Virus record (IMG/VR): IMGVR_UViG_3300034117_001294
Span: 1-64,000 of that record
DNA length: 64,000 nt
Direction: 5' to 3' (one strand)
Positions 6,990 through 33,711 of this stretch are shown here, one piece after another. Within the stretch, counting starts at the first letter, position 1. Every line of letters begins with the position of its first letter. The notes beneath the pieces were generated by a model. The model was not told the origin of the DNA and did no database searches. It saw only the letters and a program-made list of their open reading frames with translations. A program made the translations under genes and the position numbers.

Positions 6990-7292
6990 ATGAAAGCAAG
7001 TGAAATTTTAAGAGGTCTAGCTGATCTTATTGACAAGGCCAGTGCTACAAGTACTGATCAAACTAGTTCCCAAATCATGCCTATTCAAGAGCCAACTACT
7101 GCTGGGCAAACACCTACAATGGTTCCTCCACTACAGGCCAAATTAGAAATTCTAAAGAAAAGTGTGGGACTAGATAATCATTACGATAATGAGTGCGGTG
7201 AGCCAGACGAAGTAGAGCAACTAAAGAAACACGCAGGTATCAACATTGTAGCACAGCAAGAAGCTGGTGAAGACAACGATTTCTTAGGATAA
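6990..7292 (+). CDS. Hypothetical protein
   Basis: AAGGA RBS; N-terminus MKASEIL. Confidence 0.6.
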   Translation: MKASEILRGLADLIDKASATSTDQTSSQIMPIQEPTTAGQTPTMVPPLQAKLEILKKSVGLDNHYDNECGEPDEVEQLKKHAGINIVAQQEAGEDNDFLG

Positions 7293-30759: not shown

Positions 30760-30814
30760 TTTGCCTGTCAAGCATCTGGACATAGTCCAGTTAGACATGT
30801 TGGGCGAGGACTTC

Positions 30815-30843
30815 TTGACAGCCTCGTCAAAATGTAGTATAAT
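30815..30843 (+). promoter_or_regulatory. Consensus sigma70 promoter for tmRNA
   Basis: TTGACA-17 nt-TATAAT. Confidence 0.85.
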
Positions 30844-30850
30844 TTAAGTT

Positions 30851-31195
30851 AAGACTGTATGAAGTAGACAGAAAAGGATTCAAGACGCGGGGGCAGTGCC
30901 CGCCAGGTCCACCATAAAACACATTAGCCTGACTGAAACGGGCATCGAGTACGTGGAACGTGGAAGAAGGTTCGATTCCTTCATACTCAATTTCAGTAGT
31001 GTGTTTTATAATGGGCCTGACACAGGATCGATTGGGTCACAAGTATTGAAATGGACAGTCCGGCAATGTAGAAGCCGTTAGGATTGGGGTGACCCGGTCG
31101 CAGAAGCAAAACAAAGTAACCGCAAACGACTCACAGTTCGCATTAGCTGCCTAAACTCAGCTTAGGGTAGTTATACCTCGTAACAGAAAATAACA
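30851..31195 (+). ncRNA. ssrA: Circularly permuted (two-piece) tmRNA; acceptor piece about 30851-30914, coding piece from 31013, tag ANDSQFALAA at 31122-31154
   Basis: T-arm GCGGG-GGCAGTG-CCCGC plus CAGGTCC-A-CCA precedes the 5' strand GGGCCTG; 7-bp acceptor stem with G3.U70; tag gca aac gac tca cag ttc gca tta gct gcc taa; outer boundaries approximate. Confidence 0.92.
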
Positions 31196-31222
31196 GAAAG
31201 CACCTTCGGGTGCTTTTCTTTT
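31195..31222 (+). terminator. Intrinsic terminator after tmRNA
   Basis: gaaagcacc-ttcg-ggtgctttt-ctttt. Confidence 0.85.
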
Positions 31223-33261: not shown

Positions 33262-33711
33262 ATGAAGAAAATCGCAATCGCATCTCTAATCGCAATGGCA
33301 GCAATGTCTGCATCCGCATTAGAAGTTGGTGTAACAGCCGCACGTGAGTACACAGGTACAAACACAGACGGTATGGGTATTACACTAGGTCAGAAGTTTG
33401 GCAAAGTTGGTGTCACTGCTGGATTTGAGCGTTTCACTAAGGAAGTCAACGACCAAGATCGATTGAGCCTAACAGCTGGTTACGATGTTGCAAAATTTGG
33501 TCCTGTAACAGTTACTCCAAAAGTCGGGGTTGCTCATCTCAGAAACTCTGCCGCAGTTGACGGCTATGCTCTAACACTCGGTGTTGGTGCAAGTGTTCCG
33601 TTAAACAAAACTGTTGACCTCACAGTTGATGCTCGTCGCCAATACGGTCAAGACCGTGTTAACGCATTTGACGGTAACACAGTTACCGCCGGACTAAAAG
33701 TTAAGTTCTGA
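33262..33711 (+). CDS. Outer-membrane beta-barrel protein (8-strand OmpA/Ail-like)
   Basis: Signal peptide, amphipathic strands, C-terminal AGLKVKF. Confidence 0.8.
   Translation: MKKIAIASLIAMAAMSASALEVGVTAAREYTGTNTDGMGITLGQKFGKVGVTAGFERFTKEVNDQDRLSLTAGYDVAKFGPVTVTPKVGVAHLRNSAAVDGYALTLGVGASVPLNKTVDLTVDARRQYGQDRVNAFDGNTVTAGLKVKF

What the first reader, a model, noticed from the sequence alone, without database searches (positions are those of the whole stretch)
30914..31012. tRNA-like minihelix hidden in the tmRNA intervening segment
Seen: the 98-nt spacer folds as a long stem (30914-30923 with 31000-31009, and 30932-30938 with 30991-30997). It is capped by gagta(30947)...gaagg-TTCGATT-ccttc-a-tactc(30988), a canonical T-arm stacked on a 5-bp acceptor-like stem, with no D or anticodon arm and no CCA. 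The tmRNA itself lacks a canonical T-loop while its spacer has one. Inference: either an RNase P/Z processing signal or a separately released tRNA-mimic, for example a decoy for anticodon nucleases or T-loop readers, or an integration relic of a tRNA.
Basis: partly seen in the sequence, partly recalled or inferred. Interest (0 to 1): 0.6.

Follow-up and report, generated by a model that had tools for sequence, protein, structure and literature searches.

The report
tRNA-mimic RNA riding in phage tmRNA spacer
The spacer that is cut out of this lake phage's two-piece tmRNA holds one copy of a conserved, previously uncatalogued tRNA-like small RNA that related phages keep between their tRNA genes, so it looks like a passenger RNA using the tRNA-processing machinery, not a part of tmRNA.

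Summary
Window 30853-31197 is a permuted (two-piece) tmRNA gene of a 229-kb lake-water jumbo phage.

The element is not special to this tmRNA. The same ~71-nt core, closed by a variable co-varying stem, occurs in at least 20 distinct versions in viral contigs. Most lie directly after the CCA of a tRNA gene inside phage tRNA arrays.

Across these copies the acceptor-like stem and the T stem co-vary (92.5% paired against 75.7% in shuffles). A 19-nt hairpin platform and a 3' AUUUCAG are invariant. It matches no Rfam family.

In 175 related phage tmRNA genes the spacer is a conserved 13-bp stem, a "slot", holding 59 unrelated inserts. Four slots are empty hairpins, so the T arm is not needed for tmRNA maturation. 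T arms occur in 6 of 59 insert classes, against 0.016 expected by chance.

Best reading: a tRNA top-half mimic expressed as a passenger and freed by tRNA-type processing. Its target is unknown. The ideas of a compensating T loop, an anticodon-nuclease decoy and an integration relic are not supported.

The parts
30815..30843 (+). Sigma-70-type promoter of the tmRNA gene: TTGACA 30815-30820, 17-nt spacer, TATAAT 30838-30843
   Evidence: Read from the sequence. No RNA-library contig lies upstream of 30844.
30853..30914 (+). tmRNA acceptor piece. T stem 30887-91/30899-903 with the non-canonical loop GGCAGTG; acceptor 3' strand 30904-10; A73 at 30911; CCA at 30912-14
   Evidence: Rfam RF04321 101.1 bits and RF01849 70.9 bits.
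30915..31012 (+). Intervening segment (98 nt) that is removed from the mature two-piece tmRNA. It equals the 'slot' stem plus its cargo
   Evidence: It is an insertion relative to both Rfam models. An equivalent segment is present in 175 phage tmRNA loci.
30914..30926 (+). P1 5' strand of the 13-bp closing ('slot') stem. It pairs with 30997-31009 and starts at A76 of the CCA
   Evidence: Pairs 6-13, which my search pattern did not fix, are paired in 816 of 824 cells across 103 distinct spacers, with covariation. Pairing falls to about 37% beyond pair 14.
30927..30943 (+). P2 hairpin platform: GCCTG, loop ACTGAAA, CGGGC. With AT 30944-45 it forms the invariant 19-nt block. The loop is complementary to 30991-30997 (alternative helix or pseudoknot)
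   Evidence: Invariant in 20 distinct copies, though 14 of the 19 nt were imposed by the search pattern. RNAalifold predicts this hairpin.
30944..30951 (+). P3 acceptor-like stem, 5' strand (AT, mismatched C, GAGTA). It pairs with 30984-30991
   Evidence: 5 of 8 pairs show changes on both sides in relatives, e.g. GAGGA/TCCTC and AGACTTG/CAAGTCT.
30952..30965 (+). Linker CGTGGAA CGTGGAA that replaces the D and anticodon arms. It holds the GG found in nearly all copies and may mimic D-loop G18-G19
   Evidence: The alignment shows TGG or AGG a few nt after P3 in almost all versions. The elbow contact itself is inferred.
30966..30982 (+). T arm: GAAGG, TTCGATT, CCTTC
   Evidence: Rfam tmRNA models match only this 17-mer. 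The T stem co-varies: AU/GC/UA/CG at two pairs.
30984..30991 (+). P3 3' strand (TACTC, A, AT)
   Evidence: As for the P3 5' strand.
30990..30996 (+). Invariant 3' motif ATTTCAG
   Evidence: Identical in all 20 distinct copies and not part of the search pattern.
30997..31009 (+). P1 3' strand. It is followed by AAT 31010-12, the 3-nt leader before G1
31013..31197 (+). tmRNA coding piece. G1 is at 31013 and the acceptor 5' strand is GGGCCTG (G3:U70 with 30908). The tag reading frame 31122-31154 encodes ANDSQFALAA then stop
   Evidence: Rfam alignments. RNA-library contigs cover 31012-31200.
31200..31222 (+). Intrinsic terminator: GCACC, TTCG, GGTGC, then a T run
   Evidence: Read from the sequence. 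RNA contigs almost stop at about 31203.

Best explanation
The flagged segment is one copy of a conserved, phage-specific structured RNA of about 95 nt.

Anatomy:
- A closing stem that begins at an encoded CCA.
- An invariant 19-nt hairpin platform (GCCUG ACUGAAA CGGGC AU).
- A tRNA 'top half': a 7-8-layer acceptor-like stem, a short GG-containing linker in place of the D and anticodon arms, and a canonical T arm. Together they stack to about 12-13 layers, as in tRNA.
- An invariant AUUUCAG at the 3' side.

Related lake phages keep the same RNA directly behind a tRNA gene inside their tRNA arrays. In this phage it occupies the excised spacer of the two-piece tmRNA gene. In this phage group that spacer is a 13-bp hairpin 'slot' that accepts many unrelated inserts.

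Shown here: the structure, its covariation, its contexts, and the slot-and-cargo pattern.

Inferred:
- It is co-transcribed from the tmRNA promoter.
- It is set free as a stem-closed RNA of about 98 nt by the same cuts that mature the tmRNA: RNase P at G31013, and an endonuclease cut plus 3' trimming back to CCA30914.
- It then acts in trans by presenting a tRNA elbow and T loop to some tRNA-binding factor of the host or the phage.

It is a passenger of the tmRNA gene, not a working part of it.
For: 1. An exact scan for its T arm plus 3' strand found the same 71-nt core outside tmRNA genes. It lies between tRNA-Lys(UUU) and tRNA-His (L113), after other tRNAs (L117, L126, L135, L137, L139), and behind a promoter of its own (L114/L120).

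2. A looser scan gave 22 variants, and the covariance model gave 35 hits of 70-102 bits.

3. Covariation. RNAalifold on a plain MAFFT alignment predicts P2, P3 and the T stem, with 7 of 14 pairs compensatory. Pair counts are 89.8% against 77.4% (shuffled) and 36-44% (slid). On the model-fitted alignment they are 92.5% against 75.7%, with covariation score 0.457 against 0.153 and 0 of 500 shuffles as high.

4. Cargo behaviour.
- The spacer is 0/98 different in L011/L062/L101, although their acceptor piece differs at 12/62, the coding piece at 17/108, and the flanking genes are unrelated.
- L004 has the window's acceptor piece (0/62) with a different insert.
- An RNA-library contig has identical flanks, with 43 other letters in place of the 86-nt insert.

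5. Slot. 175 tmRNA loci hold 59 insert classes and 4 empty hairpins. In the whole 229-kb record the same stem type occurs only 3 times, each directly after a CCA.

6. There is one copy in this record. L036 and L129 carry it in the tRNA region while their tmRNA spacer holds another insert.

7. T arms occur in 6 of 59 insert classes against 0.016 expected.

8. RNA-library contigs span the acceptor piece plus the spacer, so it is at least present in RNA preparations.
Against: - No experiment or read-level data show the released RNA, its ends or its stability. The RNA data here are contigs only and may include DNA carry-over.
- The trans-acting role and the partner are inferred from shape alone.
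- No Ro60, RtcB, SmpB or CCA-adding enzyme gene was found in the record, which is only 65% complete. No candidate partner is therefore encoded nearby.
- The near-identity of the core in unrelated contexts could reflect recent spread of a selfish element and not function.
- One low-depth RNA contig carries T30950A, which would break a P3 pair.
- Part of the platform's invariance was imposed by my search patterns.
Confidence: 0.6

Rival explanations
1. Cis-acting processing handle. The T arm and acceptor-like stack recruit RNase P (or RNase Z) to cut inside the spacer. This shortens the 3' trailer on the preceding CCA end, or helps separate the two tmRNA pieces and neighbouring tRNAs.
For: - The element always lies where tRNA-type processing happens, nearly always directly after a CCA.
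- The stack from the T loop to the base of P3 is 12-13 layers, the length RNase P measures in tRNA (established knowledge of RNase P substrates).
Against: - 53 of 59 insert classes in the same slot have no T arm, and 4 loci have an empty hairpin.
- Many tRNAs in the same arrays are only 3-10 nt apart with no such element.
- There is one copy in this record, and L036 and L129 hold it away from their tmRNA spacer.
- It lacks a 3' NCCA, and the candidate cleavage site is base-paired.
Confidence: 0.17
2. Selfish or neutral DNA. It is a small tRNA-derived mobile or recombining sequence that spreads among hairpin slots behind CCA ends, with no function of its RNA.
For: - The 71-nt core is identical or nearly so in contexts whose flanks are unrelated.
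- Inserts are exchanged between identical flanks.
- Phage tRNA arrays supply many tRNA sequences as raw material.
Against: - Diverged copies keep P3 and the T stem through compensatory changes, and keep the platform and AUUUCAG unchanged.
- There is a single copy in the one whole record searched, which is unlike a spreading repeat.
- One context has its own promoter.
Confidence: 0.12
3. Mimic of the tmRNA tRNA-like domain. Acceptor stem, a D-loop-like UGG linker and a T arm without a D stem resemble the tmRNA tRNA-like domain. The RNA would bind SmpB, or another trans-translation factor, as a modulator. The coding-less mini-tmRNA of mycobacteriophage DS6A is reported to inhibit host tmRNA.
For: - The linker has no D stem and carries TGG or AGG, as the tmRNA D-loop analogue does.
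- PMC11915505 cites the DS6A case.
- In this phage it sits inside a tmRNA gene.
Against: - There is no 3' CCA and no conserved G3:U70 in P3.
- Rfam tmRNA models match only the T arm.
- Most copies are in tRNA arrays, not tmRNA genes.
- No SmpB gene was found in the record.
Confidence: 0.07
4. Relic of a tRNA gene, or of an element that integrated into a tRNA: a decaying fragment with no present role.
For: - Other insert classes look like a decay series. L076 is a near-complete cloverleaf with a canonical D arm and T arm but a 14-nt anticodon loop. L005-type and L059-type inserts are weaker.
- A tRNA-Ala inside a permuted tmRNA spacer has been reported once (PMC11915505).
Against: - Covariation and invariant blocks in 20 versions.
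- The spacer is 0/98 different where the mature tmRNA differs by about 17%. At that rate the chance of no change is about 1e-8.
Confidence: 0.04

Closest known systems
tRNA gene inside the intervening sequence of a permuted tmRNA gene (single case, tRNA-Ala, in MAG GCA-2688965; PMC11915505)
   Same: A tRNA-type structure sits between the CCA of the acceptor piece and G1 of the coding piece. tRNA-processing enzymes would excise it.
   Different: [quoted passage not shown] Here the insert is not a tRNA (no D or anticodon arm, no CCA). It is a separate conserved RNA family that also lives in tRNA arrays, and it is one of 59 insert classes in a conserved hairpin slot.
YrlA / bacterial Y RNAs (RF02553; PMC4201824)
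   Same: A small RNA closed by a long stem formed from its two ends, carrying a tRNA-like module with a canonical T arm. Some are RNase P substrates, and they also occur in phages.
   Different: YrlA has T arm, acceptor-like hairpin and D arm in that order, a GNCGAA motif and a neighbouring Ro60 gene. The window element has no D arm, a different order of parts, no Rfam YrlA match, and no TROVE gene in the record. A separate, weak YrlA-like RNA does exist in this phage's tRNA array.
Stable 'species 1' and 'species 2' RNAs of the phage T4 tRNA gene cluster (recalled from the literature, not checked here)
   Same: Non-tRNA small RNAs encoded among phage tRNA genes, co-transcribed with them and released by tRNA-processing enzymes. 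Their function is still unclear.
   Different: No sequence or structural relationship was tested. The T4 RNAs are longer and are not known to sit in exchangeable hairpin slots or in a tmRNA gene.
mascRNA of MALAT1 and the tRNA-like units of gammaherpesvirus 68 (recalled; RF01684 is in Rfam)
   Same: A tRNA-like fold embedded in a longer transcript is used as a handle for RNase P or RNase Z, and yields a small tRNA-like by-product.
   Different: These are eukaryotic or viral nuclear systems with full cloverleaf-like folds. There is no similarity by Rfam.
GOLLD and ROOL RNAs (PMC5737381)
   Same: Structured non-coding RNAs of unknown function that are often next to tRNA genes in phages and prophages, possibly co-transcribed. 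GOLLD was first seen in lake metagenomes.
   Different: They are 500-800 nt ornate RNAs without a tRNA top-half architecture. There was no Rfam match in any locus examined.

Membership tests
Permuted (two-piece) tmRNA gene (RF04321 / RF01849 / RF01850), the host gene | Score above the Rfam gathering threshold over the full model | tested here: met
   RF04321 101.1 bits (threshold 47); RF01849 70.9 bits (threshold 50).
Permuted (two-piece) tmRNA gene (RF04321 / RF01849 / RF01850), the host gene | Acceptor piece ending in an encoded CCA lies upstream of a coding piece starting with the acceptor 5' strand; G3:U70 pair; tag frame ending in hydrophobic residues plus stop | tested here: met
   CCA at 30912-14. 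GGGCCTG at 31013-19 pairs with CAGGTCC at 30904-10, with G31015 opposite T30908. The tag is ANDSQFALAA then stop, 31122-31154.
tRNA (RF00005) | Cloverleaf with D arm and anticodon arm, detectable by tRNA finders | tested here: not met
   ARAGORN finds nothing at default, 90% or 80% thresholds for the window class. cmscan of the spacer alone at E up to 10 gives no tRNA match.
tRNA acceptor/T-arm minihelix (model substrate of RNase P, CCA-adding enzyme, synthetases) | T arm with a canonical T loop, coaxial with an acceptor stem, about 12 bp in all | tested here: met
   T stem of 4-5 bp plus P3 of 7-8 layers in 20 versions, both co-varying.
tRNA acceptor/T-arm minihelix (model substrate of RNase P, CCA-adding enzyme, synthetases) | Free single-stranded 3' end NCCA next to the acceptor stem | tested here: not met
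   The 3' strand continues as the invariant AUUUCAG into the closing stem. No CCA is present.
tRNA acceptor/T-arm minihelix (model substrate of RNase P, CCA-adding enzyme, synthetases) | Actual cleavage by RNase P | not testable with these tools
   This needs an in vitro or in vivo assay.
YrlA / Y RNA-like (RF02553) | Rfam match; order T arm, acceptor-like hairpin, D arm; a Ro60 (TROVE) gene nearby | tested here: not met
   No YrlA match on the spacer at E up to 10. There is no D arm. There is no TROVE domain in the 229-kb record.
Coding-less mini-tmRNA (tRNA-like domain only, DS6A type) | Acceptor stem with G3:U70 and a 3' CCA, so that it can be alanylated | tested here: not met
   P3 has no conserved G:U at the third pair and no CCA. 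tmRNA models match the T arm only.
Known self-cleaving ribozymes and riboswitches in Rfam 15 | Match to any of the 4227 covariance models | tested here: not met
   On the spacer alone there are only chance-level partial matches (best E 0.09, to the T arm). No additional family was found in 26 related loci at gathering score.

The most novel reading that the evidence does not exclude
Lake-water jumbo phages may have a modular 'slot and cargo' system. Conserved hairpin stems that start at the CCA end of tRNA and tmRNA genes would serve as docking slots. Dozens of unrelated small structured RNAs (tRNA top-half mimics, a YrlA-like RNA, a pseudoknot-like RNA and others) are exchanged among these slots between phages. 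They would be expressed and released by the host's tRNA-processing enzymes. Under this reading the window's T-arm RNA is one such cargo, with a trans-acting role, for example titrating a host factor that reads the tRNA elbow.
Probability: 0.4. Interest if true: 0.8.

Novelty: new variant of a known kind. Interest (0 to 1): 0.62.

Why it matters
tRNA-like small RNAs that borrow the tRNA-processing machinery are known (Y RNAs, mascRNA, the T4 stable RNAs). This family has no match among the 4227 Rfam 15 models, and none of my four literature searches turned up a description of it. It also has two unusual properties:

- It is found both in tRNA arrays and in the discarded spacer of a two-piece tmRNA.
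- It is one of many interchangeable inserts in a conserved hairpin slot.

If the inserts are functional, phage tRNA arrays and tmRNA genes are also expression platforms for a hidden set of small RNAs. That would bear on why large phages carry such arrays.

There is a practical consequence too. Long spacers make ARAGORN miss these tmRNA genes, so surveys of phage tmRNAs that rely on it undercount them.

Tried and rejected
- **Cultured phages.** blastn of the tmRNA region against 50,697 records found no match.
- **Bacterial or archaeal origin.** Exact scans of 185,579 species genomes found nothing, either for the platform plus AUUUCAG or for the spacer stem.
- **Metagenome scan for more window-class spacers.** It gave only one extra locus, L112.
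- **Copy of one of the phage's own 39 tRNAs.** No tRNA shares its T arm plus 3' strand.
- **Y RNA idea.** No Rfam YrlA match on the spacer and no Ro60 or RtcB gene.
- **Phage-encoded partner.** No SmpB and no CCA-adding enzyme in the record.
- **CRISPR-repeat mimic.** The only hint is a 10.4-bit match at E 9.2, so I rejected it as chance.
- **Known ribozymes.** None matched.
- **Compensation for the odd tmRNA T loop.** Rejected by the 2x2 count.
- **Weak covariance-model hits (17-24 bits).** These were ordinary tRNAs, apart from a copy of another T-arm insert class at G000 86317-86404.
- **RNA evidence.** Only assembled contigs were available, so no ends, strand or abundance could be read.
- **P2 hairpin against the 7-bp helix.** This cannot be settled, because both are invariant.

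Full report
**What is in the window**

The window is the first 64 kb of a 228,849-bp IMG/VR virus record (CheckV completeness 65%, GC about 41%). Neighbouring genes are typical of a large phage: ribonucleotide reductase small chain, ThyX and dCMP deaminase. The whole record carries 39 tRNA genes at 86.5-126.5 kb, nearly all with an encoded CCA. Fourteen lake-water DNA runs, each from a different study, hold the stretch.

Rfam finds a permuted tmRNA at 30853-31154 (RF04321, 101 bits) and 30811-31197 (RF01849, 70.9 bits). ARAGORN misses it.
- The acceptor piece ends with CCA at 30912-14.
- The coding piece starts with G31013.
- The 98 nt between them are an insertion relative to both models.
- A TTGACA-17-TATAAT promoter (30815-43) and a terminator (31200-22) frame the gene.
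- Contigs from four RNA libraries lie only between about 30849 and about 31203.

**Checking the observation**

The spacer folds better than shuffles (z = -3.15). No tRNA finder or Rfam model sees more than the 17-nt T arm.

**The spacer in related tmRNA genes**

Pattern scans of viral contigs anchored on the ends of the spacer returned 175 phage tmRNA loci, with 103 distinct spacers of 38-98 nt. All those I checked are permuted tmRNAs of the beta or alpha type.

The spacer always starts and ends with a 13-bp stem.
- In pairs 6-13, which my patterns did not fix, 816 of 824 cells are paired, with several pair types per position.
- Pairing drops to about 37% beyond pair 14.

Inside the stem the sequences fall into 59 unrelated classes. 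Four loci have nothing but an 8-nt loop.

The same acceptor-piece sequence is combined with many insert classes. One insert class, which looks like a pseudoknot, sits in tmRNAs with five different T arms.

So the stem is the conserved, tmRNA-linked feature. What it encloses behaves as an exchangeable insert.

A T arm (G53-C61, at least 4 bp, loop TTYRANN) occurs in 6 of the 59 classes, against 0.016 expected from shuffles and none on the opposite strand. One of these, L076, is a near-complete cloverleaf.

T-arm inserts are not linked to tmRNAs with an odd T loop: 3 of 22 against 13 of 48.

**The window's insert is a family of its own**

Within its class the 98-nt spacer is unchanged (0/98) in L011, L062 and L101. 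Yet their acceptor piece differs at 12/62, their coding piece at 17/108, and their flanking genes are unrelated. In L033 and L112 it differs at 2/98.

An exact scan for the T arm plus its 3' strand then found the same 71-nt core outside tmRNA genes:
- between tRNA-Lys(UUU) and tRNA-His in a 27-tRNA array (L113);
- after other tRNAs (L117, L126, L135, L137, L139);
- behind a TTGACA/TACAAT promoter within an array (L114, L120).

A looser scan gave 22 variants. A covariance model (R1) gave 35 hits of 70-102 bits, including one that the patterns had missed (L036).

In 16 of 18 non-tmRNA contexts the element starts at or within a few nt of a CCA. Two types of closing stem are used.

**Structure**

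RNAalifold on a plain MAFFT alignment of 19 distinct copies predicts three helices, with 7 of 14 pairs compensatory:
- the hairpin 30927-31/30939-43;
- the acceptor-like stem 30947-51/30984-88;
- the T stem.

Pair counts for my full model:

| Alignment | Paired | Shuffled | Slid by 1-3 | Covariation score (shuffled) |
|---|---|---|---|---|
| MAFFT (A1) | 89.8% | 77.4% | 36-44% | 0.327 (0.128) |
| Model-fitted (A3) | 92.5% | 75.7% | 36-46% | 0.457 (0.153), 0 of 500 shuffles as high |

The model-fitted alignment leans towards the model by construction.

- The acceptor-like stem changes as GAGTA/TACTC, GAGGA/TCCTC, GAGGGT/ACTCTC, AGACTTG/CAAGTCT and ATGGAATG/CATTCTAT.
- The T stem changes as GAAGG/CCTTC, GTGG/CCAC, GCGG/CCGC and GGGG/CCCC.
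- The hairpin platform and the 3' ATTTCAG never change. ATTTCAG was not part of any search pattern.
- The linker that replaces the D and anticodon arms is 13-30 nt and nearly always holds TGG or AGG. I read this as a possible stand-in for D-loop G18-G19. That is inference only.
- The T stem plus the acceptor-like stem make 12-13 layers, as in tRNA.

**Slots elsewhere in this phage**

In the whole 229-kb record the same stem type occurs three times, each time directly after a CCA:
- the tmRNA spacer;
- after tRNA-Lys(UUU), 87895-87974;
- after tRNA-Leu(UAG), 92676-92790.

By my reading of the two sequences, with no alignment run, the insert after tRNA-Lys matches the L095 tmRNA-spacer insert closely. 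Another T-arm insert class (L058/L069) also occurs outside tmRNA genes, including at 86331-86393 of this record.

The window-class element itself occurs once in the record. The L036 and L129 contigs carry it in the tRNA region while their tmRNA spacers hold other inserts.

An RNA-library contig shows the window's flanks with no differences (30849-30918 and 31005-31086) around 43 unrelated letters. That is a further insert swap.

**Interpretation**

Shown:
- a conserved structured RNA with a tRNA top-half architecture;
- its position behind CCA ends in tRNA-type transcription units;
- the slot-and-cargo pattern;
- the T arm being dispensable for this tmRNA clade.

Inferred from established knowledge of tmRNA and tRNA maturation: RNase P cuts at G31013 and the 3' end is trimmed to CCA30914. 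This would free the spacer as a stem-closed RNA of about 98 nt.

Inferred from shape alone: it acts in trans by offering a tRNA elbow to some factor.

I found no partner gene. The 65%-complete record has no Ro60, RtcB, SmpB or CCA-adding enzyme. The RNA data are contigs only. They show contigs that span the acceptor piece and the spacer (X15 30867-31019, X18 30854-31004), but no ends and no usable depth.

**Comparison with what is known**

- The 2025 tmRNA database paper reports, as unique, one permuted tmRNA with an intact tRNA-Ala in its spacer. It states that tRNA-processing enzymes cut the precursor, and it holds only 79 phage tmRNAs (PMC11915505).
- YrlA Y RNAs share the closed stem and T arm but fail the membership test here (PMC4201824).
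- GOLLD and ROOL share the neighbourhood of phage tRNAs (PMC5737381).
- None of the 4227 Rfam 15 models matches the element.
- Cultured-phage records gave no blastn match to the tmRNA region that contains it.
- Exact-pattern scans of 185,579 prokaryote genomes found neither the element's platform with AUUUCAG nor the tmRNA spacer stem.

I therefore rate it a new variant of a known kind: a tRNA-like small RNA released by tRNA processing. The slot-and-cargo organisation is the more novel reading, and it is not yet proven.

**Limits**

- The sets of loci come from exact-pattern scans, so they are biased towards the anchors used.
- Spacers longer than 98 nt were not sampled.
- Sequences in a class are related, so shuffle controls overstate significance.
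- The choice between the hairpin and the 7-bp helix is open.

Noticed in passing
L125:5026-5142 (G000 90525-90641, between tRNA-Trp and tRNA-Cys): A stem-closed spacer holding, in order, a T arm, an acceptor-like hairpin, a canonical D arm and an anticodon-like arm. This is the order of a permuted tRNA or a YrlA Y RNA. Rfam YrlA matches it over the full model, but only at 25.9 bits (gathering score 69, E 0.081). No Ro60 gene is in the record.
   Followed up: partly
G000 87895-87974 and 92676-92790 (L125:2396-2475 and 7177-7291): Two more hairpin slots of the same stem type as the tmRNA spacer, directly after tRNA-Lys(UUU) and tRNA-Leu(UAG), each with a different insert. By my reading of the sequences, the first insert matches the one in the L095 tmRNA spacer.
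   Followed up: partly
L020, L009, L039, L052, L078 (tmRNA spacers): The commonest spacer insert (18 loci) has interleaved complementary blocks (GGGGC, CTTCC, GCCCC, GGGAAG), which suggests an H-type pseudoknot. It is kept in tmRNAs with five different T arms and acceptor stems. It has no Rfam match at gathering score.
   Followed up: partly
window 30853-31197: ARAGORN does not call this tmRNA gene, presumably because of the 98-nt spacer. Surveys of phage tmRNAs that rely on ARAGORN, as in PMC7162821, would miss this clade.
   Followed up: partly
window 30802-30826: An inverted repeat (GGCGAGG, 11 nt, CCTCGTC) overlaps the -35 box of the tmRNA promoter. The same arrangement is present upstream of the tmRNA in L006, whose tmRNA and spacer insert both differ from the window's. 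It may be the terminator of the dCMP deaminase gene fused to the promoter, or a portable promoter-hairpin unit.
   Followed up: no
L125:973-1057 and L125:4352-4439 (G000 86472-86556, 89851-89938): Two long tRNA-like genes that ARAGORN did not call. They match the tRNA-Sec model weakly (30.7 and 35.6 bits, gathering score 47). ARAGORN also reports a tRNA with a 2-nt anticodon at 91361-91446 and 90-92-nt tRNA-Ile(UAU) genes.
   Followed up: no
L117:2080-2150 (minus strand), downstream of the element: A second slot stem (CCATATAAAAACACACTA...) follows the element directly, so slots can be tandem.
   Followed up: no
window 33262-33711: A 149-aa phage ORF with weak Pfam matches to outer-membrane beta-barrel or porin families (Porin_4, E 3.9e-7).
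   Followed up: no
L141-L144 (tmRNA spacers): Four phage tmRNA genes have an 'empty' 38-nt spacer: a 14-bp hairpin with an 8-nt loop. They are a natural control for experiments on the inserts.
   Followed up: partly
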